This document shows positions 1 to 28,245 of a DNA stretch of 64,000 nucleotides, one piece after another; positions within the stretch are counted from its first letter, which is position 1; each line of letters begins with the position of its first letter. Below the pieces are notes generated by a model. The model saw only the letters and a program-made list of their open reading frames with translations, ran no database searches and was not told the origin of the DNA. Where the stretch lies: positions 373,332 through 437,331 of IMG/VR virus record IMGVR_UViG_3300037297_000066. One strand, written 5' to 3'. Both the position numbers and the translations under genes were made by a program.

Positions 1-342
1 ATTGAGCACTTCGTGAGGACTCAGTCGGCTTACAACGACGATGGAGCGGGCATCAAGTCAGCTTTGGTTTTGCTGGACAGGATCGAAAAGGCCAGGAAGG
101 AAGCCGAAGAGCTGAAGAAGAGTCTTTCAATGAAGGAAGACGGAGAGGAAGCGGCCCAGGAGCTCACGCCGAAGCCTATGATTTTGGATGAAGAAGACTA
201 CCAACGCCTTCTGAAGACGATCCAGAAGCCTCACAAGCTCCGCAACCAGATGACTGGCGAGATGGTGTCTGGGTACCCCATTACCCCGGCCCACATTTTC
301 GGGGATTACATCAAGGCAGTCGAAGAGGCTGAGAAGATCTAG
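1..342 (+). CDS. Hypothetical protein, probably 5'-truncated by the window edge
   Basis: Frame is open from base 1 (ATT GAG CAC TTC GTG...) to TAG at 340-342. Charged helical sequence with no recognisable motif. Confidence 0.7.
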   Translation: MEHFVRTQSAYNDDGAGIKSALVLLDRIEKARKEAEELKKSLSMKEDGEEAAQELTPKPMILDEEDYQRLLKTIQKPHKLRNQMTGEMVSGYPITPAHIFGDYIKAVEEAEKI

Positions 343-351
343 TGAGGGTAG

Positions 352-1176
352 ATGGCCTACGGGCAAGGTGAGTATGGGCAGATAGGGTACGGCGGCTCCT
401 CTTTGGAGTCTGGCGGCCCTGCTCTGACTTTCTTTGATCCTTCAGAGGCCGAAGCCATCACTCAAGACGACCCTTTGGAGTTCGTTGTTGAGTCTCCTGC
501 TGAACTGGACGTCTTCAGTCTGAATCTAAGCCTGGGTGGGAAACAGGCTATCGTAGGTGGTGTGTTCCTCTCTGGGTATGAGGGGAGCATCACCTACGAT
601 CCTGAGACGAAAGTCGTCATCACCATAGAGAAACACCCTGACTTTCTGTCGAACACGGAAGTCAGCATCACCATCACCGATCTGGCAGGGAACACAGATA
701 CCCTCGGGTACAACCTGTTGGTTCCCAATCCAATCGTTGGGCATGCAACCGTAACCGCTAGTCCAACGATTGAGACCAGTGTTCCTGTTCGGGCCATTGT
801 TTCGGACCCCAAGACTTTCTCGTACATGCAGAGGTTTCAACGGGGGGATCTGCCCATTCACTTCAGCACGGCTCAGGGGTCCTATGTGCCGGCAACGGTC
901 AGCTACACCCTCTACCAAGTCCGTGAGGATGGGACTCGGAAGCGGGTAGGGCCTCGTAACAGAGTTCCTGTGGCGGGGACCTTTGGGGAGTTCTATGTAA
1001 CCGGAAGAGCTGGTGAAAGTGGACAGCCTGGGCGGTGGGTAGTCAAGTGGGAGTACCAGCGAAACTACTCATACCCCGTGGAAGAGAAAGAGATGGCATT
1101 TCAGGTCGTGGATGCAGCGACTTTGAACTGTCCTCTCGATACGACTCCACGTTGCAGAAGGTACGGGTGGAACTGA
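352..1176 (+). CDS. Putative virion structural protein (Gly/Tyr N-terminal motif, Ig-like middle, C-terminal domain resembling the N-terminus of the 1575 protein)
   Basis: Starts MAYGQGEYGQIGYGG. Ig-like 'VSITITDLAGN'. GAGGG upstream. C-terminal SYTLY..VGPRNRVPV..GEFYV..GRWVVKW resembles 1575 WYSLH..LGVPRRSPV..GHYYA..GNYRVRW. Confidence 0.65.
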   Translation: MAYGQGEYGQIGYGGSSLESGGPALTFFDPSEAEAITQDDPLEFVVESPAELDVFSLNLSLGGKQAIVGGVFLSGYEGSITYDPETKVVITIEKHPDFLSNTEVSITITDLAGNTDTLGYNLLVPNPIVGHATVTASPTIETSVPVRAIVSDPKTFSYMQRFQRGDLPIHFSTAQGSYVPATVSYTLYQVREDGTRKRVGPRNRVPVAGTFGEFYVTGRAGESGQPGRWVVKWEYQRNYSYPVEEKEMAFQVVDAATLNCPLDTTPRCRRYGWN

Positions 1177-1571
1177 TGGATAACCTCTCCAAGCGAATCG
1201 CATTTCGTTACCAGGAGGCCAACAGCCCCCTCAACCAAGACTTCTGGATGTCTCAAGACGACATACGGGAGCTCTGCCCAGCCTGTGCTGACCGGATGGC
1301 TTCGTTGAACATCCGACAGGTCAGGGCCTCGGTCTTCTTCTCCAATGCCTCTGAGCTGGCAGGTCTGAAGACAGCCAAAGGGTGGAAGTCTCTTCCCAAA
1401 GGGTGGACTCAAGACTCTCTCAAGAGCATGTGGGAGACCATCACTGGGGACGTGAAGCACAAAGTCACGAAGTGCATCAAGAAGATGGAGGGCAAGGTCG
1501 ATGACCCTGGGGCCTTCTGCGCTTCGTTGGCTGACAAGATGGAGCCTGGGTGGAGAAGCCGTAGGGACTAA
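1176..1571 (+). CDS. Small hypothetical protein (possible internal head protein)
   Basis: Start reassigned to ATG 1176 (TGATG overlap with the upstream stop). Contains CPAC and 'KCIKKMEGKVDDPGAFCASL'. Confidence 0.65.
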   Translation: MDNLSKRIAFRYQEANSPLNQDFWMSQDDIRELCPACADRMASLNIRQVRASVFFSNASELAGLKTAKGWKSLPKGWTQDSLKSMWETITGDVKHKVTKCIKKMEGKVDDPGAFCASLADKMEPGWRSRRD

Positions 1572-1574
1572 TCG

Positions 1575-2468
1575 ATGTCAGTCGCATTCTACAGAGGGCA
1601 ACAGCTGGGTTGTGAAGACCTGAACATCTACCTGGAGAACGCCTCTGGGACTCCTACCAATGCGGCCGAGATCTGGTACTCCCTTCACGATGTGACCACG
1701 GGGCAAGAGGTGTTGTTGGGGGTTCCTCGTCGATCTCCTGTCAACCCTTCCGTGGGGCACTACTACGCTAGTGTGATCATCCCTCTTGATGCGAACATTG
1801 GGAACTACCGGGTGAGGTGGTTCTTCCGGGAAACGGTGGGGGGTCCCATTCACGAAGTGGTCCAGGAATTCTCGGTCATCGACAAGGCAACGTGTCCTAC
1901 CACTTCCTACACGGATTGTGAGACGGACATGATTCGTAGGTTGAGGATTCTGCTCCGAGACAACAATCCTGACCGAAACTACCATTTCAGACCCCCTACC
2001 CACGAAGCCACGATCAACCAGTACAACCAGGTCTTCGGATTCATTTGGGAGGATGAGGAGCTTCAGGAGTACCTGGCTAGGGGCATGGACATGATCATTG
2101 CTGCCCCGCCCAGGACTCCCTTCGCTTCCTGTGATCAGCTGGTGCAGTGTCGCCCTGAGTGGAGGACTCTCCTACTCAATGGGGCTATGATCCATGCTCT
2201 CTTGGCCTTGCAGATCAACTGGATTGCTGACGAATTCGACTACAGCATCGGGGGCGTGAGTCTGACCATCGACAAGTCGAGCAAGTACGAGAGCGCCTAC
2301 AACAGTGTCAAAGACATGTTCAATGACCAGTTGGAAAAGGCCAAAAGCACGGTCAAGATCGTTCGAGGACTGCAGCAGCCTCGCTACGGTATCGGAATTC
2401 GCTCGTCTTTCGGCCCTTACACAGGTCGGGGTGTGTTGAGTCCTCGAAAGTTTGTAGGTTTCGGTTGA
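1575..2468 (+). CDS. Putative head-tail adaptor/neck protein
   Basis: Helical 'MIRRLRILLRD..WEDEELQEYL' followed by 'FDYSIGGVSLTIDKS', a beta-hairpin pattern typical of head-tail adaptors. Lies upstream of the tail genes. Confidence 0.65.
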   Translation: MSVAFYRGQQLGCEDLNIYLENASGTPTNAAEIWYSLHDVTTGQEVLLGVPRRSPVNPSVGHYYASVIIPLDANIGNYRVRWFFRETVGGPIHEVVQEFSVIDKATCPTTSYTDCETDMIRRLRILLRDNNPDRNYHFRPPTHEATINQYNQVFGFIWEDEELQEYLARGMDMIIAAPPRTPFASCDQLVQCRPEWRTLLLNGAMIHALLALQINWIADEFDYSIGGVSLTIDKSSKYESAYNSVKDMFNDQLEKAKSTVKIVRGLQQPRYGIGIRSSFGPYTGRGVLSPRKFVGFG

Positions 2469-2500
2469 TACCTAACCCCTTTGTGGGGTAAGGCTTTCGT

Positions 2501-2836
2501 ATGCCCGATGAGTCCAAGAAGAAACTGACTGTCAAAGATCCTGTTCCTAAGGAAGTGCTGGTTGTGTTGGAGCAGCTGGCTAAGGCTCGGGGGTCCTTGG
2601 CTGACCAGCTACTGGAGATGGAGCAGCGGAGGATCACTTTTTTGGCAGCTGCCAAAAGGGTTGAAGACCAGCGGAAAGCAGTTTTCGAGGAGATCTTGAC
2701 TTCCCGAGGGCTGGCTCCCGGGACCCCTGTTAACATCTCCAGCTCGACTGGTGAGATCACTCTGACGAGCCCTCCTGAGGGAGGTCATCCAGAGGAAACG
2801 TCTTCGGAGGAAACGCCTTCGGAGAAAACGCGCTGA
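2501..2836 (+). CDS. Hypothetical coiled-coil protein
   Basis: 111-aa ORF filling the gap in the operon, with a heptad-like helix. Confidence 0.65.
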   Translation: MPDESKKKLTVKDPVPKEVLVVLEQLAKARGSLADQLLEMEQRRITFLAAAKRVEDQRKAVFEEILTSRGLAPGTPVNISSSTGEITLTSPPEGGHPEETSSEETPSEKTR

Positions 2837-2852
2837 GTGAGCTTTCCTTTTT

Positions 2853-2875
2853 TGGATTCCCTTGAGGGGAATCCA
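2853..2875 (+). promoter_or_regulatory. Perfect 9-bp hairpin covering the RBS and first base of the 2875 start codon
   Basis: TGGATTCCC-TTGAG-GGGAATCCA(TG). Confidence 0.6.
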
Positions 2876-4251
2876 TGCCCTACGCTACTCAGCGAGACAG
2901 AGATCCGCACCAGCTGGAAATTGAGAGCTCCCCTTACCCGGTCTCTCCGTTGAATTTGTCCATGACTTCTGGCTACGAGCCGGGGGTCATCAATTTGACG
3001 TGGGATGACGCGGCCCAACTGTTTCAGAATTCTCGGTTTCAGATCATCGGGGTCAACGTTTGGAGGTCTTTCGACAGCGAGTTCGGTCCTTACGATCGGG
3101 TCACGACCTTGCCGGTGGGATCTAATTTCTGGCAGGACCGTACAGACAACGTGCTGATTCCAGCTGAGGATGTTTCGGATTCGTTCATCCTCAGAGGAGT
3201 TAACTCGACCGGATCGGACTACGGTAGGTACGTATTTCAGACCCAGTATCCTATCGTGAAGGCAGGTTCCCAGGCGATACCGGCAAACAGTCCTGATGAT
3301 GTGTTGGTGATGGTGGATGGGGTCCAGGCTCGGGTAAAGCGAGTTGATGGGTTCGCCAAAGAAGTCGAGCTGGATACCACCAAATACTACAACACCGAGA
3401 AGCAGAACCAGGATACCCCTGTCTATCCGGGGGACAACAGCGTGGTCACCTGTGCCTATCGGTACAACCGAACGCTTCTGAAGACAGACCTAGCACAAAG
3501 GGTCTTCTACAGAGTTACCACGGTAGGTCTTCCTGAGGCTTCTGATCTGTCGGCCGCTTGTTGTGAGGATCTTCGGGAGACGCCTTTGGAGCGGGCTCCT
3601 GTGACCAGCACCTCAGAGATTGAGAAGCTGGACTACATCTGGAGGGAAGGTATTCGACGCAATCGTTGGATTCTGTTCCAGGGGGGCGAGCGAGTGAAGG
3701 TCTTCATCAAGAAGCATGTAGGGCCTATTTGCCCATGCCGAGGTCCTCACTACGAGAGTTTTCATCAGCCCAAGAATGATTGCGAGCTGTGTTTTGGGGC
3801 GGGTATTTTGGGAGGGTATGAAGGCCCCTACGATATCATCATTGCTCCTGACGATGCTGAGCGTAGGATTGCTCAACGGGACGTTGGTCGAACCGTGGAA
3901 CATACCTACGAGGTCTGGACGGGTCCTTCCCCTCTCCTAAGCCAGAGAGACTTCTTGGTTAAGATCAACGGGGAGCGCTACTCAATTGGAGCCGTACGGT
4001 TTCCGTCCAATCGAGGAATGGTGTTGCAGCAGCATTTCAATATCAGCCGTTTGGACGAACAGGACATTCGTTACAGGGTCCGGGTAACGGCTCCTTGTGG
4101 GGTGTCTGCCAACGTGGCGGGAGTTGGTCGAGCTCTTCCTGGCATACCTCCTGGCAGTAATGCGTCTGTCCCCCTCACTGAGAAGTGCAACATTCCTAAT
4201 GAGCGTGAGATCAGAGGCCGCACTGTGACCTGGAAGAACATCACGTTCTGA
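2875..4251 (+). CDS. Putative head-closure/neck protein with FN3-like N-terminus and Zn-finger insert
   Basis: FN3-like 'PLNLS..INLTWD..GVNVWRS'. Zn motif 'CPC..CELCFGAGILGGY'. C-terminal 'LSQRDFLVKINGERYSIGAV' resembles the head-closure barrel. Synteny after the adaptor. Confidence 0.6.
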   Translation: MPYATQRDRDPHQLEIESSPYPVSPLNLSMTSGYEPGVINLTWDDAAQLFQNSRFQIIGVNVWRSFDSEFGPYDRVTTLPVGSNFWQDRTDNVLIPAEDVSDSFILRGVNSTGSDYGRYVFQTQYPIVKAGSQAIPANSPDDVLVMVDGVQARVKRVDGFAKEVELDTTKYYNTEKQNQDTPVYPGDNSVVTCAYRYNRTLLKTDLAQRVFYRVTTVGLPEASDLSAACCEDLRETPLERAPVTSTSEIEKLDYIWREGIRRNRWILFQGGERVKVFIKKHVGPICPCRGPHYESFHQPKNDCELCFGAGILGGYEGPYDIIIAPDDAERRIAQRDVGRTVEHTYEVWTGPSPLLSQRDFLVKINGERYSIGAVRFPSNRGMVLQQHFNISRLDEQDIRYRVRVTAPCGVSANVAGVGRALPGIPPGSNASVPLTEKCNIPNEREIRGRTVTWKNITF

Positions 4252-4257
4252 TTACCT

Positions 4258-4770
4258 ATGCGGCCTCCTAAAGTCAAAGTTGGCCGAGTCAACCTCAAGC
4301 CTTTGCTCCCTCCCGGGAGTCTGGAGACATTTGATGCTCAGAAGGTCCTTCGGTCTATTTCCAGGGAGGTGGTGAAGCAGCTCAGAGACAAAATCCTTCA
4401 GGAGCCTTTCTCGGACCGGGCCAAAGTAGCGTTGAGCAAGGCCATAGGTGTCACGGTGGGGCCCCGGAGCATCACTATCACAGCCAAGCACCCGGCCTTC
4501 AAGCCTCTACTGGAGGGACGCAAAGCCAGACAGATGACCTGGTTGACCAAGGCTAAGCGCCCCATTCCCATCATCACAGAGGACGGTGAGCTGATCTTTC
4601 GTTCGGCTACTCCTCGATCGATGCAGAGGGGCAGTTGGTATCATCCTGGAAGGTCTCCCACGACTGTCATTGAGCGTGCCCGAAAGGAGGCTCGAAAGAG
4701 CGTAAAGAAGAGAATAGTCAAGGCTTTAGCTAGCCACGTACGTAAGACGTACAAGAAGGGATCCAGATGA
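4258..4770 (+). CDS. Basic neck/tail-completion-like protein
   Basis: Very K/R-rich 170 aa with 'WYHPGRSP'. Position between head closure and tail terminator fits Ne1/HK97 gp10-type proteins. Confidence 0.5.
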   Translation: MRPPKVKVGRVNLKPLLPPGSLETFDAQKVLRSISREVVKQLRDKILQEPFSDRAKVALSKAIGVTVGPRSITITAKHPAFKPLLEGRKARQMTWLTKAKRPIPIITEDGELIFRSATPRSMQRGSWYHPGRSPTTVIERARKEARKSVKKRIVKALASHVRKTYKKGSR

Positions 4771-4771
4771 A

Positions 4772-5323
4772 ATGAGTGGTGGTATGGTTGTTTTGGGCAA
4801 CGTCACGGGGACTCACTTGATAGAGGATATTCAGGTGTCTGTGCCTTATCAGGTGGCTGTGACGCTCACACAAGAAGACGTTGTAAGGTCTCGTGACTTG
4901 TGGGTTGCTCTTCAGCAGAGGTTCATAGTCAAGCTCCGAGATTTTCGTCAGGTACCGAATCCTCCTAGATCGAATAATGCAACCTCGGCAGATTCTTCAG
5001 ATCTGTTGAGACTGCAAGAGGAGAATCGGAAGCTTCAATCCGAGCTGAGGCAGTCGAATCAGCGGACCGATGGTCTCGAATACAAGCTGGATGCCATCCT
5101 AGCGGCCCTAGGAAAGCTTTCTACGGTATCCCCTAGGGGAGAGACCGCTCCCGTTGAAAAGCCTCTCAGTGAGGCTGTGGGGGGTGACACGCCCATGTTC
5201 CTTCCGGAGTTTTCAGGGACTGAGTCGGAGGCTCGTATCAAGGTCAAAACTCAGCAGGAGGAGAGTGGCAGGGTACAGGAGGCGGCCGCTCTGCTGAGGA
5301 GGCTTCGCCAGCAAGAGAAGTGA
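4772..5323 (+). CDS. Hypothetical protein with central coiled coil
   Basis: 183-aa ORF coupled to the upstream stop. Contains 'LLRLQEENRKLQSELRQ'. Confidence 0.65.
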   Translation: MSGGMVVLGNVTGTHLIEDIQVSVPYQVAVTLTQEDVVRSRDLWVALQQRFIVKLRDFRQVPNPPRSNNATSADSSDLLRLQEENRKLQSELRQSNQRTDGLEYKLDAILAALGKLSTVSPRGETAPVEKPLSEAVGGDTPMFLPEFSGTESEARIKVKTQQEESGRVQEAAALLRRLRQQEK

Positions 5324-5358
5324 TTCTTTTGATAGCGTTGGAATGACAGAGGTACGTT

Positions 5359-6051
5359 ATGGATCCCAAATGGAAGGCTGTTTCCGTCCCTACCAGCAAG
5401 ACGGCTTGTTCCTGTGACTCTGGAAAAGCTAAATGGCCTTCCAGTTTGGAGGCAGTGTGGCAGAATCCCACTGCTTACGACGCTTTGGAGGACGGCCCTT
5501 CCTACATGCCCACGAAGACAGCCAGTACAACGGATCGGGCGGCTGTAGCCCGAATGGTTCAGGCCAATACGTACGCTGGGCAAAAGTTGGCTGACGAGGT
5601 GGGGGGAACCAGGTTAGTATCTCTGCTGACGGTCATGAAGGCTTTGTACCTGATCCACCAGACTCATCACTGGAGGACCAACGGGGCGTCCTACTATGCG
5701 GACCATTTGTTGTTCCAGCGGATCTACGAAGAGTCTCTGGAGTACATCGATGGGATGGCAGAGCGGGCTATAGGGACGTCAAACAACCCTTGGGTGATCT
5801 GTCCTATGAAGTTGGCCAAAGGTCAGCTCAATGTCGTACACTTCTTCTGTGAGGGCAATTCTCAACCGAGCCCTGAGCAAATGGTCAACATCAGCCTCAA
5901 AGCGGAGCTGGCTTTCTTGGCTTTTCTGAAGCAGGTTGTAGAGGCTATGAGGCAAGAGGGAAGCTCGACGGATGGCGTTGAGGACCTGATTCAGGGAACC
6001 GCCAGTAAGCATGAAGAGTTCGTTTACCTGCTGCAGCAGCGGTCCAGGTAA
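5359..6051 (+). CDS. dps: Dps/ferritin-like protein with ~80-aa N-terminal extension
   Basis: 'HHWRTNGASYYADHLLFQRIYEESLEYIDGMAER' matches the Dps ferroxidase signature HW...H..F...Y.E.....D..AER. Final helix 'HEEFVYLL'. Confidence 0.85.
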   Translation: MDPKWKAVSVPTSKTACSCDSGKAKWPSSLEAVWQNPTAYDALEDGPSYMPTKTASTTDRAAVARMVQANTYAGQKLADEVGGTRLVSLLTVMKALYLIHQTHHWRTNGASYYADHLLFQRIYEESLEYIDGMAERAIGTSNNPWVICPMKLAKGQLNVVHFFCEGNSQPSPEQMVNISLKAELAFLAFLKQVVEAMRQEGSSTDGVEDLIQGTASKHEEFVYLLQQRSR

Positions 6052-6086
6052 AATCCAAATCCAGAATACATCAGACGAGGATACAG

Positions 6087-7097
6087 ATGAGCAAGAAAGA
6101 AGAAGGGCTTACTCTTGGGGTAGGTCTAGACATCGGGACCATGAACCTTGTAGGGGCCCGGGAGGTGGAAGGCAAGACCGTCTTCACACAGGTACGGGAC
6201 GCCTTTCTGGACCTTGATCCGGAAGCGAAACGATCTCTCAAGATGTCGGGAGTGAACTTTCTGGAGAGCAACGGGTCCTTGGTGGTGGTTGGGGACAGTG
6301 CCTTGACCATGGCCAACCTTTTCAAGAGGGAGGCTCGTCGTCCTTTGAGTCGAGGGGTGATCTCGGCTGGGGAACTGGATGCTCAAGAGATCTTGAACGT
6401 CTTGTTGCTTGAAGTGGTGGAGCAGGCCCGGGAAGAGGGGGAGCACTGCTTCTACTCAGTTCCTGCGCCGCCTCTTGATGATCCAGGTCAAGACATCATT
6501 TTCCACACTGAGATCTTTCGTAAGATCATCAGGGGGCACAAGTACACGGCGCATCCAGCCAACGAGGCGATGGCCATCATCTTCAGCCAGTGCGTTGAGG
6601 AGCAGTTCTCGGGTTTGGCGGTGAGTTTCGGGGCCGGGATGTGCAACGTGGCCTTGGCCTACAAGGCTGCTTCTGGAATGGAATTTTCCTTGGCTCGGGG
6701 AGGAGACTGGGTGGATTCTCAGTCGGCCCGAGCGGTGGGCAAGACTGCTAGTCAGATGTGTGCCATCAAGGAAAAGGGAGTGAACCTGGCTCAACCTCAA
6801 GGTAGAGAACAGGAGGCTCTGGCTCTCTACATTCGCTCTTTGATCAACTACTGTCTCCAGAACATCGTTGCTCAGTTCAAGAAGGTTCGAAACGATGTGT
6901 CGTTGCCTGATCCGATCCCCTTTATCGTTTCGGGAGGATCTTCGATGGCCGGCGGGTTCTTGGAGTTGTTCAAGGATGAGTTCCAGCAGGTCAAAGGGTT
7001 CCCCATCGAAATCAGTGAGATTCGAGCAGCCGCCGATCCCATGACAGCCGTGGCCGAGGGGTTGTTGGTGCTCGCCAAGCAGGAACACGAAGAGTAG
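6087..7097 (+). CDS. Actin-fold ATPase (MreB/ParM/MamK-like)
   Basis: Phosphate-1 'GLDIGTMN', MreB-like 'RPLSRGVI', connect-1 'NEAMA', phosphate-2 'SFGAGMCN', adenosine 'VSGGSS', connect-2 'DPMTAVAEG'. 336 aa. Confidence 0.88.
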   Translation: MSKKEEGLTLGVGLDIGTMNLVGAREVEGKTVFTQVRDAFLDLDPEAKRSLKMSGVNFLESNGSLVVVGDSALTMANLFKREARRPLSRGVISAGELDAQEILNVLLLEVVEQAREEGEHCFYSVPAPPLDDPGQDIIFHTEIFRKIIRGHKYTAHPANEAMAIIFSQCVEEQFSGLAVSFGAGMCNVALAYKAASGMEFSLARGGDWVDSQSARAVGKTASQMCAIKEKGVNLAQPQGREQEALALYIRSLINYCLQNIVAQFKKVRNDVSLPDPIPFIVSGGSSMAGGFLELFKDEFQQVKGFPIEISEIRAAADPMTAVAEGLLVLAKQEHEE

Positions 7098-7098
7098 C

Positions 7099-8274
7099 GT
7101 GTACTACTTTCTCACCAACTCCCTTAGGAACCGTTTGATTCTGGAGCTGCAGGATTCGTTTTCGAAGCATGCTCTCTACAAAAAGATCGTTCCTAACATC
7201 CAGAACAAGTACGCCTTCAAAGAGCGGCCTCAGTTTGGGGTAGTGGTCAAGGGAGCCAGCGGAAACAAAATCCAGCTCTCGGCGGACAACTTCATTGGGG
7301 AAGTACTGAGCCATGTCATGCTGGCGTATGTGGGGGAACATCAGTTTCCCTTGGAGTGGGTGAGAGAGGACCTGAATAGAGTTAGGGCAGCAGGAGGTTT
7401 CCCTTCTCCTCCGGGGATCTACTATATCGAGGTTCTTCAGGCTCCAACCAATCCGACAGAGCCTGGGTTTTTCGCTATCGACCCTCTTTACACGCAGCCT
7501 GATGAAGCGGTTCTGGTTTTCCAGTCGGGAATTGAGAAAGAGGCCCAGCTTCAGAACGTACCCGTTCAGGACACTGTGCGGATCTGGGAGAACAACAAGC
7601 GGCTTCTCATCGAGGGAACGGACTACATCGTCAATTATGAGACGGGGGCGGTGGCTGTCTTGCAGTCGTTCCCTCCTGGGACTACTTGGATTGCTCAATA
7701 CCGTTATGCTGGGGAGTCCCAAGGTCCTATTCCCTTCTACTGGAACAGGGCGGACTTCGAGAGCATTCCGGGGGTGGTACTGGCTTTTGGAAAGAGAGCT
7801 GTTGAGGGGGATACGGTGGCTGTGGTTGTCTACCAGGATAGGGTAGGCACAGCCAAGGCTTATGGAGGGCAATTCGAAGCCTCTTTTGATTTGGATGTTA
7901 TGGCTCGTGATACCGAGCAGGTGGGGGAAATCGCCGACATGATCTTCATGTACCTCATGGCGGAGAAGCGTCCGATTCTGAGTGAAGAAGGTCTAGAGAT
8001 CATGGACGTCTCTATGGGGGGTGAGGCTGAAGAAGTGATGGATGAGAGTGGAGACAACTACTCCTATACCGTTTCCATGTCGGTACAGATCCAGTCGGTG
8101 TGGGAAATTCATATTCCGCAACCTCTCACCATCAGCAGAGCTACTCCTGTGACAGCTGCGGGGGATTCCGATCCTTCTCAACCTTCAGGACTTGTGGCCA
8201 GGGCGGACAAGCTGTTTTTCCAGACCACCCCCATTCTGGCCAACAGAAATCCAGATTACGAACGCATCGGATGA
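7099..8274 (+). CDS. Putative tail terminator/tail-completion protein with inserted beta domain
   Basis: 'SFDLDVMARDTEQVGEIADMIFMYL..VSMSVQIQSVW' pattern and position just upstream of the sheath. GTG start coupled to the upstream stop. Confidence 0.55.
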   Translation: MYYFLTNSLRNRLILELQDSFSKHALYKKIVPNIQNKYAFKERPQFGVVVKGASGNKIQLSADNFIGEVLSHVMLAYVGEHQFPLEWVREDLNRVRAAGGFPSPPGIYYIEVLQAPTNPTEPGFFAIDPLYTQPDEAVLVFQSGIEKEAQLQNVPVQDTVRIWENNKRLLIEGTDYIVNYETGAVAVLQSFPPGTTWIAQYRYAGESQGPIPFYWNRADFESIPGVVLAFGKRAVEGDTVAVVVYQDRVGTAKAYGGQFEASFDLDVMARDTEQVGEIADMIFMYLMAEKRPILSEEGLEIMDVSMGGEAEEVMDESGDNYSYTVSMSVQIQSVWEIHIPQPLTISRATPVTAAGDSDPSQPSGLVARADKLFFQTTPILANRNPDYERIG

Positions 8275-8277
8275 ACC

Positions 8278-8712
8278 ATGCCCAAGTACACTTTCGAGTG
8301 TGATTCCTGCAACGTTAGGTTCACTCGGACTCTCAAAATGGGAGAACACCTGACCTGCGCCTGTCCCAAGTGCAGAGAGCAGGTTCCTAGGTTTTGGGAT
8401 GGACAGGGGTTTTCCTTCGATTTTGCCGAGGGAGGGAAGGCCCCGGCAAACAGTGGGGTGACCAAGCACGATTATCCGACGGCGGACCAGGCTGTGGGAA
8501 GGTCCGCCGACAAACGGTGGGCAGAGTACCGAGAGCGGGAAAAGGTGAAAGAAAAGGTTCGGGAGAGGGGGGGTTCCAGAGCCTTGAATCGGACAGACTC
8601 CCCGGAAATAAACGGAAATCGTAGCTATATCCAGTACACAGCCATAGGAGAAAAGGAGCTCCAGGGACGTCGGGAAGTGGTGGGTAAGCTTAAGCAGCTA
8701 GAGCCTCGATAA
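8278..8712 (+). CDS. FmdB-family zinc-ribbon protein
   Basis: 'MPKYTFECDSC..F....CPKC' matches the FmdB-type MPxYxxxCxxC...CPxC motif. Confidence 0.8.
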   Translation: MPKYTFECDSCNVRFTRTLKMGEHLTCACPKCREQVPRFWDGQGFSFDFAEGGKAPANSGVTKHDYPTADQAVGRSADKRWAEYREREKVKEKVRERGGSRALNRTDSPEINGNRSYIQYTAIGEKELQGRREVVGKLKQLEPR

Positions 8713-8754
8713 ACTATCGTTTGACTCTACTAATGTAGAGCGGTTCTGCTGCTC

Positions 8755-8802
8755 AGATTCAGATGTAGACGTAGATCAAAAGCCCTAGATCCAGATTAAA
8801 AT
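8755..8802 (+). promoter_or_regulatory. 6-nt-periodic RAY array in the sheath gene leader
   Basis: GAT/GAC/AAT at 8756, 8762, 8768, 8774 and 8788, 8794, 8800. The same pattern recurs in four other leaders. Confidence 0.55.
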
Positions 8803-8832
8803 TGGCATTTTTCCTGCGAATAGGAGTGTCCA

Positions 8833-11800
8833 GTGTCTCTAGGACCATTGACGACCTACGTTCCCCCTGGCATCTACACCCGCACCCTGACCGAGGTCAA
8901 CGCAGCCAACTTGGTGGCTGGCCTTCGGATCCCCGTTGTCATTGGCGTGGGACAGGAACAGCTGGAGCAATCCGACCTGGAAATGGTCAGGGGTAGCTCG
9001 GCTACTCTGGACCAGCAAATCGTCAGCGAGGACGTCTCACAGTCTTTCGTGGTGGACAACTCCAATCCTCTGGTTCCCGTTCTGGGACCCACGGATGGGA
9101 CCTTCACGACGGTTCGAGTTCGCAACTACCCCATTGTGGATGGACAGGGCTTTGGCCGAGTGACCAACGACGTTCGTTCGGTCAGTGCCACGGTCAACGG
9201 GACGCCTGTGGCCATCGGAAGTGTGCAGGGTACCAACGGATACATCACCTTCCAGGTACCGCCTCAGGTGGGGGACGACGTTCGGGTCACCTATTACTTC
9301 CACCGAGGAGACACTGCTTTCACGGATACCGTGTCTGACCAGGTGACTCCGACCACAGCGGACCTGACCACTCCTGCAGTGGCCAACTTCGCTTTCACGA
9401 CAGGTATCAGCGACACCTTCGTGATCGGAGTGGATGGTACTGACAGTACCGTTGTCTTTACCGAGGGCATTCACACAGCTCTAGCCGTCAAGACCATGAT
9501 CGACGCCGCTCTGATCACTGGATTGACTACGGCAGTCTTCACGGACAACGAAGGCAATGACCACGTCACTCTGACGGCGGCTCAGAAGCTGGTGATTGGT
9601 ACGGGCAACGCTAATGGAGCTTTGGGCTTCACGGCGGGGGCTTCCACCAGTCGAAACGTCAACTTCCGGGTGTTCCAGCGTCCTATCGTGGATGGAACGG
9701 ATGGAGGGATCACCACCACAGACCCAAGCAAGGTTGTGGTGCTAGTGAACAACTCTCAGGTCATTCCCACTGCTGTGGATGGCACCAACGGAATCGTGAC
9801 TTTGCCGATGGCCCCTGCGGCTGGAAGCACCGTCACAATTCAGTACTGGGCCAACACGTGGCAGGACACCTTCGACTACTTGCCCAACACGCTGGTTTCG
9901 ACGGTGACCCGTTGCGGGTTCTCGCCTGGTCGTTCGGACTACATCCAGAACCAGGATTTCGTCATCTCCAATCCGAGCGAGGATGTCTCGGTGGTCCACT
10001 GGGGCTCCAGTGTGGCTGTTTCCTCAGTCCTGAGAACGGCTGGGGCAACCGTCTTCGACGAGACGCAGATCCTGGCCTCTTTGGTCGATGACAAGATGTA
10101 CTTGGCGGAATGCACCCGGGTGGTAGACACCACGGTCGTTCCTGCCGAGACATCTCCCAATGAGTTCCTGCTCCCGGCTATTCCGACCACAGGCAACGGT
10201 CGAGACACGCCGCTTGGGAGCACACTCTACAACACGGTCACCAATGGCCGGATGAACCTGAACACGGATCGTCCCGATCTCATCACGGTCTACACTGGTC
10301 GAGATCTTCGGGATGCGTTGGGTCGGGATCCCATCGATGTGATCGAAGTGGATGCCCTCAATCGCCAGATCACGCTCAAGCAGGCCGTTCCTCCAGATCA
10401 CAACGCCTACGCCACGTTCTGGTATAGCCGTCTGTCTGACGACACCTACGTGCTGACCAACAAGGTGGCTGGAGCCGTTGGTACAGGAGAGTACGAGGTA
10501 TTCAGTTCCGTTCAGAACAACAACCTCTTGCAGGTTCTGTTCGGAAGCAAGACGGCTACCGAAGTCATTCAGTGGCCTCGGGGAGTGGAGAGTATTCCAG
10601 ATGCCTTCCACACGGGTACGGGAACTGGGTCTCCAGTGGCCGAGACTGTCACTGTTACCTTCGCTTCTGAGGCAGCCAAGAATGCTGCTTACACTAACGA
10701 AGGGGCCGCTCCCTACGAGTTCTTCGCTGGAACTTCGGATCAGTGGGTGACCGTGCTCAACGGCGTGACCTACCCTACGGACCTGGATACAGCCGTGGTT
10801 GGTCGAATCGTTGGGACTCGGGTGGCTGTGGATGGTTCCGACCAGATCACCTTCACCACGGGCGTCAACGACGTTCTGAACCTGACCATCGACGGTACGG
10901 ACTACACTGTGACTTTCTCAGCAGGCGCTACTGCTGTGGGGCCAGTGGGAACGCCTGGGACGGTCCTTGCTCAGATCGCTGCGGTCATTCCGACCACACC
11001 TGAACTGGTTCAGTTGGGTCCCTCGGGATCTGATGTGATGTTCATCATCCCCTCGTCTTCGACGCCTGCGGCTTTGCCTGGTGGCTTCGACCATGTCTCT
11101 GCGGTCAGCGTCCGTCAGGGTACTGCCGAGACGACTTTGGGCTTTGTGCCTTTCCAGTCGGCCTCGGGGACTCCCACGGCAACCAACAAGCCGGCCACCC
11201 TTTTGGGTACGGAGACCGGGGACTTCATCATCACTCTTGGCGTGAACGACGAGTTCAAGTTCCGGGTCGATGGATTGGAGTACACAGTCACTCTGACGGC
11301 GGGCACTCGTACGGCGACCCAGGTGGTTTCGGACATCACGGGTGTGGTTGCTGGGGTGGCTTCTGTGGGTACCTTGGCCAACTTGGACAAGGTTCGACTC
11401 ACCAGTACCACCACCAACTCTGGCTCTAGGATCGTCATTCTCGATGGCTCAGCCAACGATACGCTGGGCTTCACCGAAGATGATTCGGCGAGCTACACGC
11501 CTGTCACGGCTCAGGAAGTGGTCAACGAGCTTCTGGCCACGGCCAGTTTCCAGACCGACGGGGTGGCTTACGTTTCCACCATCAATGGAAGCCAGTACGT
11601 AACCATTGAGTCCAGTGATGTGGGAGCCACTACCCCATCGGCATCGAGCATCGCTTTCACGTCGGTTTCCAACTCGGCATTCAACACTACCACGGGTACA
11701 GGCATCGAGCCTGGCACCAGTGGAGACAATGGTGAGGACGCTCGGGACATTTACACCGTTGCCACGGACCGAACAGACGGCCTGGGTTCTGGTGGAACCG

Positions 11801-13092
11801 GTGTTCCGGGGCAGACCTACACGGATGCCAAGACGGGCCTGAGATTCACGGTTCTGGAGTCTGCCACGGGGTCCTACACTCCTGGAGGCACCTTTACTCT
11901 GACTGTCAGCCCGACCTGGAAAGTCCATCCTTCGATTCCAAGCCTGCAGTTGGGCGGTCTCGAAGTCATCGTCACGGACACGGTGGGTGTGGGAGTGGAC
12001 GACACGGCCAATGTTCAGGCGTTCAATCCTGGTGGTAGCGAGCCAGCTGTCGGAGACTTCTACTACATCAGCTATCAGTACCTGAAGCAGGATTTCTCGA
12101 CTCGGCTGTTCCAAACCTTCAAGGTCATCGAGGCCAACTTTGGTCGTTTGAGTCCTGAAAACAGGGTCACCTTGGCTAGCTTCCTGGCCATTCTGAATGG
12201 TGCGGTCCTCGTGGGTATCAAACAGGTGCTCAAGGAGTCCAACACCAACCAGGCCAGTGACGCTTCGTTCTTGGCGGCCCTTCAGGAGCTGACCATTCCG
12301 CTGCCTGGCAACGTCAAGCCGGATGTATTGGTGCCTCTCACGACCTCTACGACGGTCTATGGGGCTCTGATGCAGCACTGTGAGGTTCAGTCCAACATTC
12401 GCAACCAAGCGGAAAGGATGGGCTTCATTGGGTTCGCTTCGGGAACCTCTCCGATCACAGCCCAAACGATTGCCAAGAGCTTGCTCAGCAACCGTATCGT
12501 GGCTGTGTACCCGGACTCGGCAGTCATTACTGTGACCAATGAACTGGGTGAGAGCAGCGAATCTCTGGTTGACGGCACCTTCCTGGCTTCAGCTTTGGCT
12601 GGTGCGATCGTCAGCCCGGCTGTGGACGTGGCGACTCCGTACACGAGGCGACAACTTGTCGGAATCGACCGGCTTCCTCGGGTTTTGGACCCGGTGGAGG
12701 CAAGCCAGACAGCAGTGGCTGGTATCACGGTCCTGGAGGATCTCGCAACAACTGTTCGAGTCAAGCAGGGTCTGACCACGGACATGTCCACGATTCTGAC
12801 TCGCCTTCCCACGGTGACTCAGATTGCGGACTTCGTGCAGCAACAGTCCCGAGCTACCTTGGATGCCTTCGTGGGCACCAAGTTCCTCAGCCAAAGGACG
12901 AACGAAGTCGAAGTCTCGATGACTTCTCTGTTCAACCAGATGTTGCAGGCAGAGATTGTTGGAGGCTTCACGGGAATCAACGCAGAGGTGGATCCCAACG
13001 ATCCGACCATCATGCGGTTCGAGGCGTTCTACGCTCCGATCTTCCCGCTTTTGTACATCGTCCTCACATTCAACCTAAGAGCTAACGTCTAG
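8833..13092 (+). CDS. Contractile tail sheath protein, very large (1419 aa)
   Basis: N-terminal 'YVPPGIYT'. C-terminal sheath domain 'ERMGFIG..NRIVAVYP..LAGAIVS..AGITVLE..VKQGLTT..QIADFVQQ..FVGTK..YAPIFPLLYIVLTF'. AGGAG upstream of GTG. Confidence 0.92.
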   Translation: MSLGPLTTYVPPGIYTRTLTEVNAANLVAGLRIPVVIGVGQEQLEQSDLEMVRGSSATLDQQIVSEDVSQSFVVDNSNPLVPVLGPTDGTFTTVRVRNYPIVDGQGFGRVTNDVRSVSATVNGTPVAIGSVQGTNGYITFQVPPQVGDDVRVTYYFHRGDTAFTDTVSDQVTPTTADLTTPAVANFAFTTGISDTFVIGVDGTDSTVVFTEGIHTALAVKTMIDAALITGLTTAVFTDNEGNDHVTLTAAQKLVIGTGNANGALGFTAGASTSRNVNFRVFQRPIVDGTDGGITTTDPSKVVVLVNNSQVIPTAVDGTNGIVTLPMAPAAGSTVTIQYWANTWQDTFDYLPNTLVSTVTRCGFSPGRSDYIQNQDFVISNPSEDVSVVHWGSSVAVSSVLRTAGATVFDETQILASLVDDKMYLAECTRVVDTTVVPAETSPNEFLLPAIPTTGNGRDTPLGSTLYNTVTNGRMNLNTDRPDLITVYTGRDLRDALGRDPIDVIEVDALNRQITLKQAVPPDHNAYATFWYSRLSDDTYVLTNKVAGAVGTGEYEVFSSVQNNNLLQVLFGSKTATEVIQWPRGVESIPDAFHTGTGTGSPVAETVTVTFASEAAKNAAYTNEGAAPYEFFAGTSDQWVTVLNGVTYPTDLDTAVVGRIVGTRVAVDGSDQITFTTGVNDVLNLTIDGTDYTVTFSAGATAVGPVGTPGTVLAQIAAVIPTTPELVQLGPSGSDVMFIIPSSSTPAALPGGFDHVSAVSVRQGTAETTLGFVPFQSASGTPTATNKPATLLGTETGDFIITLGVNDEFKFRVDGLEYTVTLTAGTRTATQVVSDITGVVAGVASVGTLANLDKVRLTSTTTNSGSRIVILDGSANDTLGFTEDDSASYTPVTAQEVVNELLATASFQTDGVAYVSTINGSQYVTIESSDVGATTPSASSIAFTSVSNSAFNTTTGTGIEPGTSGDNGEDARDIYTVATDRTDGLGSGGTGVPGQTYTDAKTGLRFTVLESATGSYTPGGTFTLTVSPTWKVHPSIPSLQLGGLEVIVTDTVGVGVDDTANVQAFNPGGSEPAVGDFYYISYQYLKQDFSTRLFQTFKVIEANFGRLSPENRVTLASFLAILNGAVLVGIKQVLKESNTNQASDASFLAALQELTIPLPGNVKPDVLVPLTTSTTVYGALMQHCEVQSNIRNQAERMGFIGFASGTSPITAQTIAKSLLSNRIVAVYPDSAVITVTNELGESSESLVDGTFLASALAGAIVSPAVDVATPYTRRQLVGIDRLPRVLDPVEASQTAVAGITVLEDLATTVRVKQGLTTDMSTILTRLPTVTQIADFVQQQSRATLDAFVGTKFLSQRTNEVEVSMTSLFNQMLQAEIVGGFTGINAEVDPNDPTIMRFEAFYAPIFPLLYIVLTFNLRANV

Positions 13093-13100
13093 TTCGAAGG

Positions 13101-13134
13101 ACGGGGTGCCAAGGGATAGCCTTTGGCACCCTGT
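13101..13134 (+). terminator. 15-bp hairpin after the sheath stop (terminator or processing/stability element)
   Basis: ACGGGGTGCCAAGGG-ATAG-CCTTTGGCACCCTGT with two G-U pairs. No immediate U-tract. Confidence 0.5.
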
Positions 13135-13264
13135 GAGGGTTCCTTCCTAGGGGTCTGTAAATCCTGTCTTTTTTGGCAGGAGCATTCGCAGGCTAGGGCT
13201 CATGTGCTATACATGAACCTCGTAGGTCTATGCCGTTTTGGTGTAATGATCTTATCACCTAGGT

Positions 13265-28243: not shown

Positions 28244-28245
28244 GG

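What the first reader, a model, noticed from the sequence alone, without database searches (positions are those of the whole stretch)
6087..7097. Actin-fold ATPase embedded among neck/tail-terminator genes
Seen: all actin-superfamily motifs are present, including MreB-like RPLSRGVI, but phosphate-2 reads SFGAGM rather than DxGxGT. The stop is 1 nt from the GTG of the probable tail terminator, and the leader carries a RAY array. Known: phage cytomotive proteins such as PhuZ tubulin and actin-like AlpC act in DNA or capsid positioning, and ParM works with an adjacent DNA-binding adaptor and centromere. Inference: late, tail-coupled expression suggests a role in virion assembly or trafficking (scaffold for tail polymerisation or head-tail joining) rather than genome segregation.
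Basis: partly seen in the sequence, partly recalled or inferred. Interest (0 to 1): 0.7.

Follow-up and report, generated by a model that had tools for sequence, protein, structure and literature searches.

The report
Volactin-type actin plus adaptor in huge phage
A 437-kb phage carries, inside its neck and tail gene block, a well-conserved actin relative of the archaeal "volactin" family together with a small partner protein predicted to clamp onto it, which suggests that some huge phages build their own actin-like filament system.

Summary
The ORF at 6087-7097 is real. It encodes a 336-aa actin-fold protein of the Volactin family (Pfam PF25216, 233.7 bits; MreB falls below its cut-off). The odd phosphate-2 loop SFGAGM is the signature of the whole family, including haloarchaeal volactin, which forms dynamic filaments in vivo.

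The neck and tail context is also real. The flanking genes are homologous to the head-tail connector, a stopper-like neck protein, the tail terminator and the tail sheath of Tunturiibacter phage Tunturi_5. The downstream protein has the gpU-type tail-terminator fold. The cassette is conserved in about 65 huge-phage contigs.

The actin is not a neck part, however. Phages with the same neck module (Tunturi_5, Bacillus phage G) lack it, and a more distant phage clade carries it elsewhere.

What travels with the actin is an upstream partner gene (4772-5323). It encodes an N-terminal domain, a coiled coil and a conserved C-terminal helix. The helix is predicted to dock into the cleft between actin subdomains IA and IIA (ipSAE 0.69, best control 0.00). 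The same C-terminal motif ends the membrane protein (DUF7139) encoded upstream of archaeal volactin.

Best reading: an adaptor-coupled filament system, ParM/ParR-like in logic, that is probably expressed late. Its cargo and timing are untested. The "RAY array" is not significant.

The parts
6087..7097 (+). Volactin-family actin homologue (P0001, 336 aa)
   Evidence: Pfam PF25216 at 5e-69, 233.7 bits (cut-off 35), covering profile positions 3-321 of 321; MreB_Mbl scores 18.6 bits, below its cut-off of 27. AF2 model pLDDT 93.5. Best match is Hfx. volcanii volactin D4GU28: TM 0.92, rmsd 1.8 A, 36% identity. Median 64% identity across the phage clade.
4772..5323 (+). Predicted actin adaptor: soluble N-terminal domain (about 1-57), coiled coil, FIP motif and C-terminal amphipathic helix (about 156-182)
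   Evidence: It is the immediate upstream neighbour of the actin in L067, LR745208 and the distant clade L072/L073 (hmmsearch 8e-13, 3e-12, 4e-7, 7e-6). C-terminal motif conserved. Coiled-coil Pfam hits. No TM segment. Complex prediction ipSAE 0.69 against a best control of 0.00.
5359..6051 (+). Dps/ferritin-like protein inserted between adaptor and actin in this clade only
   Evidence: Pfam Ferritin 24.6 bits (cut-off 24.5); phrog_3636 'DNA binding protein' 1.3e-10. Present in 62 clade loci. Not detected in L059, L067, LR745208 or the distant clade.
6052..6086 (+). 35-nt leader with GAGGA Shine-Dalgarno; the 'RAY array' is not significant
7099..8274 (+). Tail terminator (gpU-like core with an inserted beta-sandwich); start 1 nt after the actin stop
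   Evidence: tblastn to Tunturi_5 gp324 'tail terminator' 5e-17 against the locus (6e-12 in the collection search). VIA-align Z 11.1 to the phage 812 neck, 10.4 to the E217 neck, 8.7 to the pyocin R2 collar, 7.7 to lambda gpU, 6.7 to T4 gp15.
8278..8712 (+). Small protein with an N-terminal zinc ribbon; conserved member of the neck/tail cassette
   Evidence: Pfam Zn_ribbon_8 1.8e-7. Profile also hits Tunturi_5 (5.5e-10).
8833..13092 (+). Tail sheath (1419 aa)
   Evidence: tblastn to Tunturi_5 gp326 'tail sheath': 2e-58 (N-terminal part) and 2e-56 (C-terminal part).
2875..4251 (+). Neck protein, stopper-like, with an invariant C-P-C ... C-x-x-C tetra-cysteine motif
   Evidence: Homologous to Tunturi_5 gp322 (1e-32) and Bacillus phage G gp175 (5e-7). 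Invariant C286/C288/C306. The same Cys pattern is described for Herelleviridae stopper proteins (PMC12886913).
4258..4770 (+). Conserved 170-aa cassette protein of unknown function, upstream of the adaptor
   Evidence: Present in 59 clade loci at 41-65% identity. No family hit.
1575..2468 (+). Head-tail connector (adaptor) protein
   Evidence: tblastn to Tunturi_5 gp319 'head-tail connector protein' 8e-27. Weak phrog_17327 hit. Most conserved gene of the cassette, median 69% identity.

Best explanation
The gene encodes a phage-borne member of the volactin family of actin homologues. It works as one half of a two-gene module.

The actin most likely polymerises into nucleotide-dependent filaments, as Haloferax volactin does. 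The partner encoded at 4772-5323 is a soluble, oligomeric (coiled-coil) adaptor. Its conserved C-terminal amphipathic helix inserts into the cleft between actin subdomains IA and IIA. This would couple filament ends or subunits to whatever the adaptor's N-terminal domain binds. The logic is that of ParM/ParR.

In this phage clade the module has been inserted into the neck/tail late gene block, between the head-completion genes and the tail terminator. It is therefore probably made together with virion parts. It would then position or move a large assembly intermediate (filled heads, tails or the DNA being packaged) in the infected bacterium.

What is shown:
- family membership, fold and motifs
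- conserved synteny
- the conserved adaptor-actin gene pair across phages and archaea

What is predicted: the adaptor-actin interface.

What is inferred only: polymerisation, late timing and the cargo.

My odds:
- volactin-family actin homologue: 0.97
- filament plus adaptor system: 0.6
- role in virion assembly or trafficking specifically: 0.3
For: 1. Family. Pfam Volactin 233.7 bits over the full length. AF2 model pLDDT 93.5, TM 0.92 and rmsd 1.8 A to Hfx. volcanii volactin; next come salactin, MreB/Mbl and MamK. It is 35-38% identical to haloarchaeal volactins and shares the SFGAGM.N phosphate-2 loop. Volactin forms dynamic filaments in vivo (PMC10869688).

2. Constraint. Median identity in the clade is 64%, second only to the connector and above sheath and terminator. 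Inteins have invaded homologues at five or more sites inside the phosphate-2 loop and at AR|GGDW. Inteins typically target essential active-site motifs.

3. Partner. The 4772 family is the immediate upstream gene of the actin in several divergent clades, including one where no neck genes are nearby. Its FIP motif and C-terminal helix are conserved. The complex prediction passed: score 0.69 with a best of 3 controls of 0.00. That mark was reached by 58 of 80 solved complexes and 2 of 110 mismatched pairs, and these counts hold only roughly because my own alignments were used. The runs agree in at least 38% of contacts, and partner pLDDT is at least 54. The interface is partner residues 156-182 on actin residues 26-36, 166-174, 193-195 and 320-336.

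4. Generality. A profile of the phage C-terminal motif hits 33 ORFs among 6,637 in the archaeal volactin loci. All 33 are same-strand ORFs lying just upstream of volactin. These are DUF7139 four-TM proteins that end in repeats of the motif. hhalign gives E 5.6e-5. Other viral and metagenomic lineages have small upstream proteins with the same C-terminus, three of them with an N-terminal TM helix.

5. Context. The order connector, stopper-like protein, adaptor, actin, terminator, sheath is conserved in about 65 loci. The actin lies 1 nt from the terminator start. No sigma-70-type promoter on the + strand, and no terminators above chance, in 1-14000. The window continues into a tail lysozyme and Baseplate_J.
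Against: - No expression data of any kind. Only DNA runs hold the sequence.
- Polymerisation was not tested. Phosphate-2 lacks the Asp and Thr of MreB, ParM and actin, so the chemistry of hydrolysis may differ.
- The complex score is a model's confidence. It may reflect memory of ParM-ParR or actin-WH2 type complexes.
- The neck placement is specific to this clade. Phages with the same neck module manage without the actin, so it is not required for neck or tail assembly as such.
- The adaptor's N-terminal domain matches nothing, so the cargo is unknown.
- The promoter scan covers only sigma-70-type sites. A phage-specific promoter in front of the module cannot be excluded.
Confidence: 0.55

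Rival explanations
1. ParMRC-like DNA positioning. The filament plus adaptor moves or segregates phage DNA (replicating genomes or DNA destined for packaging). The neighbouring Dps/ferritin-like DNA-binding protein, or the adaptor's N-terminal domain, would provide the DNA contact.
For: - The actin plus an adaptor with a C-terminal helix predicted to dock in the IA/IIA cleft is the ParM/ParR arrangement.
- A Dps-like 'DNA binding protein' (phrog_3636, 1.3e-10) sits between the two genes in this clade.
- Salactin, another haloarchaeal actin, aids DNA partitioning (PMC10869688).
- The genome has no tubulin/PhuZ that could do this job.
Against: - No centromere-like direct or tandem repeats in 2400-9000.
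- The adaptor shows no recognisable DNA-binding domain.
- The Dps-like gene is missing from L059, L067, LR745208 and the distant clade, all of which keep the adaptor-actin pair.
- The placement is in the late structural block rather than among replication genes.
Confidence: 0.2
2. Manipulation of the host cell. The phage actin remodels host cell shape or the envelope, or anchors at the membrane as cellular volactin does, for example to enlarge or stabilise the cell for a very large burst. It would not handle virion parts.
For: - Cellular volactin acts in cell-shape transitions, and its filaments touch the membrane at their tips (PMC10869688).
- In archaea and in three viral or metagenomic lineages the adaptor is a membrane protein.
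- The nearest solved folds are MreB and MamK.
Against: - In the window's clade none of the 17 adaptors examined has a TM segment.
- MreB Pfam score is below cut-off.
- No MreC/MreD/RodZ-like partner was seen nearby.
- The host is a bacterium (SLT tail lysin), and no bacterial cellular volactin homologue turned up in my searches (one search returned only archaeal titles, apart from one MAG labelled 'bacterium').
Confidence: 0.12
3. A non-polymerising actin-fold ATPase that acts as an Hsp70-like assembly chaperone for neck, terminator or sheath assembly. It might even be a minor virion component.
For: - Tight coupling to the tail terminator gene (1-nt gap; 9 nt or less in 31 of 61 loci).
- The phosphate-2 loop is divergent.
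- Hsp70 and HscA nucleotide-binding domains appear among distant structural matches.
- From memory, not checked here: closteroviruses use an Hsp70 homologue in virion assembly.
Against: - The closest relatives by far are filament formers (volactin TM 0.92, then salactin, MreB, MamK).
- There is no substrate-binding domain.
- Phages with the same neck module lack it.
- The distant clade keeps the gene away from neck genes.
Confidence: 0.1
4. A recently captured cellular gene (host MreB/FtsA-like or archaeal volactin) with no phage-specific role.
For: Actin-fold genes are occasionally picked up by phages. The family was named after an archaeal protein.
Against: - It lies in a 13-row all-viral clade (SH-aLRT 99), inside a 47-row clade of viral and metagenomic sequences (98). 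The 15 cellular archaeal sequences fall in a separate 16-row clade (97), together with one metagenomic representative.
- Conserved at 54-71% identity, with fixed synteny, in about 65 huge-phage contigs of up to 512 kb.
- It has its own phage-type adaptor.
Confidence: 0.03

Closest known systems
Volactin (VolA, HVO_2015; UniProt D4GU28) of Haloferax volcanii, Pfam PF25216
   Same: - Same Pfam family, with a full-length match.
- 36% identity, and predicted structures superpose at TM 0.92 and rmsd 1.8 A.
- Same S-F-G-A-G-M-x-N phosphate-2 loop and RRP..G.IS motif.
- Same gene arrangement, with an upstream partner that ends in the same amphipathic motif.
   Different: - Encoded by a huge phage of a bacterium, not by an archaeal chromosome, and in a separate, all-viral branch of the tree.
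- The partner is a soluble protein with a coiled coil instead of the four-TM DUF7139 membrane protein.
- It is embedded in a neck/tail operon. A cell-shape role is not expected.
ParMRC plasmid segregation system (ParM actin, ParR adaptor, parC centromere)
   Same: - An actin-like ATPase encoded next to a small oligomeric adaptor.
- The adaptor's C-terminal helix is predicted to bind the cleft between subdomains IA and IIA. The ParR-ParM binding mode is recalled from the literature and was not checked here.
- Volactin dynamics were likened to ParM by its discoverers.
   Different: - Not the ParM family. ParM structures rank far below MreB and MamK.
- The adaptor is encoded upstream rather than downstream and has no ribbon-helix-helix domain.
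- No centromere repeats found.
- The setting is late structural genes, not a plasmid.
MreB / MamK
   Same: Nearest solved structures: the MamK filament 5ljv (TM 0.74-0.76) and MreB (TM 0.6-0.7).
   Different: - 16-18% identity.
- Pfam MreB_Mbl is below its cut-off (18.6 against 27 bits).
- Phosphate-2 is D-x-G-G-G-T in E. coli MreB and S-F-G-A-G-M here.
- No MreCD/RodZ or magnetosome context.
PhuZ tubulin spindle of nucleus-forming jumbo phages (Chimalliviridae)
   Same: A phage-encoded cytomotive filament in a very large phage. PhuZ is implicated in positioning the phage nucleus and delivering capsids (PMC8314001 and PMC9067925, listed, abstracts only).
   Different: - Tubulin fold against actin fold.
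- This genome has no tubulin.
- No adaptor of this kind is known to me for PhuZ.
- This phage clade is related, through its neck genes, to Tunturi_5 and Bacillus phage G, not to Chimalliviridae.
Phage and prophage actin-like proteins AlpC (Corynebacterium CGP3) and the Alp7A family
   Same: Actin-like proteins encoded by phages or plasmids and working with an adjacent adaptor (recalled from the literature, not checked here).
   Different: - Different actin families.
- Their known roles are in DNA replication and segregation of temperate elements.
- They are not placed in neck/tail operons.

Membership tests
Volactin family (Pfam PF25216) | Full-length match to the family profile above the curated gathering score | tested here: met
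   233.7 bits against a cut-off of 35, profile positions 3-321 of 321. The same result comes from the genome search.
Volactin family (Pfam PF25216) | Actin fold close to the founding member (Hfx. volcanii VolA) | tested here: met
   AF2 model pLDDT 93.5. TM 0.92/0.90, rmsd 1.8 A and 36% identity to D4GU28.
Volactin family (Pfam PF25216) | Family-specific nucleotide-site motifs (GLD.GT; S-F-G-A-G-M-x-N; GGDW.D; GG in the adenosine loop) | tested here: met
   All are present, and invariant or nearly so, in 26 family members and in 14 of the 16 archaeal sequences examined (one more reads SCGAGM; one ORF is truncated).
Volactin family (Pfam PF25216) | Assembly into dynamic filaments | not testable with these tools
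   Known only for Hfx. volcanii (PMC10869688).
MreB/Mbl (Pfam PF06723) | Match above the gathering score | tested here: not met
   18.6 bits against a cut-off of 27, C-terminal third only.
MreB/Mbl (Pfam PF06723) | Canonical phosphate-2 D-x-G-G-G-T | tested here: not met
   Reads S-F-G-A-G-M.
ParMRC-type segregation system | Adjacent adaptor that binds the actin through a C-terminal helix | tested here: inconclusive
   Prediction only. ipSAE 0.69 against a best control of 0.00. The mark was reached by 58 of 80 solved complexes and 2 of 110 mismatched pairs. Runs agree in at least 38% of contacts; partner pLDDT at least 54. The gene pair is conserved.
ParMRC-type segregation system | Centromere-like repeat array next to the genes | tested here: not met
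   Only short, chance-level repeats in 2400-9000, and no tandem array near the module.
ParMRC-type segregation system | Actin of the ParM family | tested here: not met
   The Pfam assignment is Volactin. A ParM structure appears only at rank 48 of the fold search.
Tail terminator (gpU / gp15 type), for the downstream gene 7099-8274 | gpU-like core fold, and a position directly upstream of the sheath gene | tested here: met
   VIA-align Z 11.1 (phage 812 neck), 10.4 (E217 neck), 8.7 (pyocin R2 collar), 7.7 (lambda gpU), 6.7 (T4 gp15). Homologous to the gene annotated as tail terminator in Tunturi_5. Model confidence is modest (pLDDT 64).

The most novel reading that the evidence does not exclude
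Volactin-family actins, in haloarchaea and in many huge phages alike, are one half of a conserved two-gene cytomotive module. Its second half is an adaptor with a shared C-terminal actin-binding helix and an exchangeable N-terminal 'address'. The address is a four-TM membrane anchor in archaea, a single TM helix in some viruses, and a soluble domain in this phage clade. In this clade the module has been wired into the neck/tail late operon. There it would work as an actin-based machine that positions or transports virion assembly intermediates. That would be the first actin counterpart of the PhuZ tubulin spindle, and it would also identify the missing volactin-binding factor in archaea.
Probability: 0.3. 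Interest if true: 0.85.

Novelty: new variant of a known kind. Interest (0 to 1): 0.66.

Why it matters
Phage-encoded cytoskeletons are known mainly from the PhuZ tubulin of nucleus-forming jumbo phages. Here an actin family known so far only from one archaeal study turns out to be widespread in huge phages. More than 1,000 clusters at 50% identity match it, and many lie on contigs of 300-500 kb. It is strongly conserved, invaded by inteins at its nucleotide-binding loop, and paired with a previously unnoticed adaptor.

This gives two directly testable predictions:
- Huge phages of bacteria build actin-like filaments late in infection.
- The DUF7139 membrane protein encoded upstream of volA is the factor that anchors the tips of volactin filaments to the archaeal membrane, a factor the volactin paper left open.

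The full-text library held no paper that mentions DUF7139, and none of the 14 volactin papers listed (of 17 found) is about phages, judging by title.

Tried and rejected
- PDB sequence searches with the actin and with profiles of the three main neighbours gave nothing useful.
- The PHROG scan gave no hit for the actin and only weak hits for the neighbours.
- The protein atlas gave only unnamed viral clusters for the 2875 and 4772 proteins.
I left that row out.
- Profile-profile comparison of the distant clade's neighbours with the terminator and the stopper-like protein found no relation. Pfam and PHROG gave only NUDIX and GT9 there.
- No paralogue of either adaptor domain exists elsewhere in the genome, so the cargo could not be guessed from shared domains.
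- No RNA runs were found.
- The idea that the adaptor's N-terminal domain is an AbrB/SpoVT-like DNA binder rested only on a visual resemblance. It got no Pfam support and is dropped.
- The 'RAY array' as a regulatory element of the actin leader is rejected.
- I could not establish which phage 812 neck protein the matching chains (8qkh_G, 8q01_M) correspond to. The terminator call rests on the gpU, gp15 and collar matches and on the Tunturi_5 homology.
Full report
**What the window is.** The window is the last 64 kb of a 437,331-bp IMG/VR virus record (G000:C1:373332-437331). The record has a 127-bp terminal overlap, 55% G+C and the standard genetic code. It was assembled from wetland metagenomes and also occurs in marine-sediment metagenomes. 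No RNA run holds it. The genome encodes an SLT lytic transglycosylase/tail lysozyme (window 28240-30213) and a Baseplate_J protein (47099-50551). It has no tubulin and no sigma-70. So this is a huge contractile-tailed phage, most probably of a bacterium, and the whole window is a co-directional structural gene block.

**The observation.**
- ORF 6087-7097 (+) encodes 336 aa. It matches Pfam Volactin (PF25216) at 5e-69, 233.7 bits against a cut-off of 35, over profile positions 3-321 of 321. MreB_Mbl reaches only 18.6 bits, below its cut-off of 27.
- In an alignment of 26 family members the classical actin-fold motifs are invariant or nearly so.
- The unusual phosphate-2 loop S-F-G-A-G-M is therefore a family signature. 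Haloferax, Halorubrum, Natronomonas and other cellular volactins read SFGAGMTN.
- An AF2 model has pLDDT 93.5. Its best match among reviewed proteins is Hfx. volcanii volactin (TM 0.92, rmsd 1.8 A, 36% identity). Salactin, MreB/Mbl and MamK follow. Among solved structures the best are MamK and MreB filaments.
- The actin stop is 1 nt from the GTG at 7099.
- The 'RAY array' in the 35-nt leader amounts to 5 RAY triplets in 33 positions against about 2 expected, in no common frame. The related hexamer is not enriched upstream of genes in this genome. I do not count it as a feature. The leader has a good GAGGA ribosome-binding site.

**The neighbourhood.** tblastn against deposited phages linked the flanking genes to Tunturiibacter phage Tunturi_5 (308 kb, host Acidobacteriota):

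| Window gene | Tunturi_5 gene, as annotated | E-value |
|---|---|---|
| 1575-2468 | gp319 'head-tail connector' | 8e-27 |
| 2875-4251 | gp322 'minor tail protein' | 1e-32 |
| 7099-8274 | gp324 'tail terminator' | 5e-17 |
| 8833-13092 | gp326 'tail sheath' | 2e-58 and 2e-56 |

- The 2875 product has an invariant C-P-C ... C-x-x-C motif, like the tetra-cysteine loop described for the stopper proteins of Herelleviridae (PMC12886913).
- An AF2 model of the 7099 product has modest confidence (pLDDT 64). It aligns with the neck of phage 812 (Z 11.1), the E217 neck (10.4), the pyocin R2 collar (8.7), lambda gpU (7.7) and T4 gp15 (6.7). That is a gpU-type terminator core with an inserted beta-sandwich.
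- No sigma-70-type promoter on the + strand, and no excess of terminators, was found in 1-14000.

**Distribution and conservation.**
- The protein has more than 1,500 homologues in the 90% clusters. In the 50% representatives there are 1,032 clusters at E of 1e-3 or better and 303 at 1e-30 or better.
- Eighty IMG/VR loci were fetched. In about 65 of them, on contigs of up to 512 kb, the cassette is collinear: connector, small ORF, stopper-like, 4258, 4772, Dps-like 5359, actin, terminator, Zn-ribbon, sheath.
- Median identities are connector 69%, actin 64%, sheath 61%, stopper-like 57%, terminator 56% and adaptor 32%. The actin is as constrained as the core structural proteins.
- In a maximum-likelihood tree of 109 sequences rooted on E. 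coli MreB, the window's protein lies in a 13-row all-viral clade (SH-aLRT 99). That clade sits inside a 47-row clade of viral and metagenomic sequences (98). The 15 cellular sequences (Halobacteria and Thermoplasmatota, including one MAG labelled only 'bacterium') fall in a separate 16-row clade (97), together with one metagenomic representative.
- It is thus not a recent capture of a host MreB or FtsA. The root on one long MreB branch is weak, so the direction of transfer between viruses and archaea is open.

**The neck link is specific to this clade.** Tunturi_5 and Bacillus phage G share the neck module but have no actin. Only two deposited phage records, both uncultured huge phages, match the actin. 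A phage clade at 35-38% identity (L071-L078) carries the gene next to a NUDIX hydrolase and a GT9 glycosyltransferase. No connector, stopper or terminator homologue lies within 8 kb there, even by profile-profile comparison. So the actin is an insertion into the neck block of one lineage, not a part of the neck machinery.

**What travels with the actin.**
- A profile of the 4772 family finds the gene immediately upstream of the actin in L067 (8e-13), LR745208 (3e-12) and the distant loci L073 and L072 (4e-7, 7e-6), and about 1.5 kb upstream in L059 (1e-21).
- The family has three parts: an N-terminal domain of about 57 aa that is absent from the distant clade, a variable coiled coil that hits many coiled-coil Pfam families, and a conserved C-terminus with an F-I-P motif and an amphipathic helix (A-A-x-x-L-R-x-L-R).
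- It has no TM segment and no paralogue in the genome.
- I used the one complex job on this pair, and it passed. The score was 0.69 and the best of 3 controls 0.00. The mark was reached by 58 of 80 solved complexes and 2 of 110 mismatched pairs. These counts hold only roughly because my own alignments were used. The runs agree in at least 38% of contacts and the partner's pLDDT is at least 54.
- The confident contacts are adaptor residues 156-182 with actin residues 26-36, 70, 109-110, 166-174, 193-195 and 320-336. In the model these actin residues are the connect-1 helix, the C-terminal helix and adjoining hairpins, that is, the cleft between subdomains IA and IIA. From the literature (recalled, not checked here) this is where ParR binds ParM and where WH2-type helices bind actin. 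The pass could therefore partly be memory of such complexes.

**The pair is older than the phages.**
- A profile of only the C-terminal 44 residues of the phage adaptors was searched against all 6,637 ORFs of 80 archaeal volactin loci. It gave 33 hits at E of 1 or better. Every one is a same-strand ORF ending just upstream of volactin, a class that makes up 9% of the ORFs. The loci are related, so this is not 33 independent events.
- These proteins are DUF7139 (PF23600) proteins. They have four TM helices, an acidic linker and two or three C-terminal copies of V-D-D-A-V-x-x-L-x-x-L-R-G-G-like motifs. hhalign of phage against archaeal partners gives E 5.6e-5, probability 66%, over 32 columns.
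- Four further lineages taken from the metagenomic representatives, plus L079 and L080, were checked. All but L167 have a small protein encoded just upstream (one gene removed in L166 and L079) with the same kind of C-terminus; in L080 this is by eye only, without a profile hit. Three of these proteins have an N-terminal TM helix.
[quoted passage not shown] The DUF7139 protein is an obvious candidate. No paper in the library mentions DUF7139.

**Inteins.** Many homologues are about 700 aa long. In L069 Pfam finds an intein splicing domain and a LAGLIDADG endonuclease inside the actin. Junctions in 18 representatives show at least five insertion points within the phosphate-2 loop (after S180, G182, M185, N187 and the next residue) and one at A-R|G-G-D-W. 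Inteins characteristically home to conserved active-site motifs of important proteins. This fits a functional nucleotide site despite the missing Asp and Thr.

**Mechanism.** The best-supported reading is a filament-plus-adaptor module. The actin polymerises. The coiled-coil adaptor binds it through its C-terminal helix and links it to a target chosen by the N-terminal domain. In this clade that domain is soluble and unique, and the genes sit between head-completion and tail genes, tightly packed with them. A late role in handling virion intermediates is therefore plausible but unproven.

Rivals:
- DNA positioning in the ParMRC manner. The Dps-like neighbour speaks for it. The lack of centromere-like repeats and the patchy presence of the Dps-like gene speak against it.
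- Host shape or membrane manipulation. The membrane-anchored adaptors elsewhere speak for it. The soluble adaptor here speaks against it.
- A non-polymerising chaperone.
- A functionless recent capture, which is effectively excluded.

**Verdict.**
The gene is an actin homologue in a genuine neck/tail setting and has long been a phage gene. But it belongs to the volactin family. Its constant companion is an adaptor, not the tail genes. Its timing and cargo remain to be shown.

Noticed in passing
L069:7989-10088; proteins P0121, P0125-P0127, P0129, P0136, P0155, P0173, P0180, P0184, P0191, P0210, P0226, P0231, P0237, P0248, P0260: Intein hot spot. Volactin homologues of about 700 aa carry inteins (splicing domain plus LAGLIDADG endonuclease) at five or more distinct points inside the phosphate-2 loop and at A-R|G-G-D-W. 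The window's own copy is intein-free.
   Followed up: partly
L103:4993-5895 (Haloferax gibbonsii), with equivalents in L085, L093, L152, L083, L135 and L087: The gene upstream of cellular volactin encodes a DUF7139 four-TM protein. Its cytoplasmic tail ends in 2-3 repeats of the same amphipathic motif as the phage adaptor. It is a candidate membrane anchor for volactin filament tips and is not mentioned in the volactin paper.
   Followed up: partly
window 13265-17683 (+): A UvrD/REP-type helicase of 1472 aa interrupted by an intein (Intein_splicing, residues 617-945). It sits directly after the tail sheath gene, in the middle of the structural block.
   Followed up: no
window 8755-8796 (intergenic, upstream of the sheath gene): The densest cluster of AGAY / CCAGAT-like repeats on the + strand of the genome (6 in 42 nt). 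Similar arrays lie upstream of the sheath gene in related phages (median 4 per 130 nt against 1.1 expected in 51 loci). It may be a regulatory or translational element of the most highly expressed tail gene.
   Followed up: partly
window 2875-4251; L036:3627-6260 and L041:3729-6359: The stopper-like neck protein has an invariant C-P-C...C-x-x-C motif like Herelleviridae stoppers. In two related phages the ORF is about 878 aa instead of about 450, possibly another intein or an inserted domain.
   Followed up: no
L071-L078 (for example L073:6877-7434 and 9610-10866); L082 (Tunturi_5 gp321); L167:5550-6476: NUDIX hydrolase genes recur near volactin genes or the neck module in otherwise unrelated contexts. 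In the distant phage clade a GT9 heptosyltransferase-like gene lies shortly downstream of the actin, after one small ORF.
   Followed up: no
window 51930-59675 (+): A 2581-aa ORF with repetitive matches to DUF2963, fvmX3 and DUF2585. It lies downstream of the Baseplate_J protein (47099-50551) and is presumably a giant tail fibre or baseplate protein.
   Followed up: no
window 5359-6051 (+): A Dps/ferritin-like protein with an N-terminal extension of about 85 aa is wedged between adaptor and actin in this clade only. Whether it keeps a ferroxidase centre or binds DNA was not examined.
   Followed up: no
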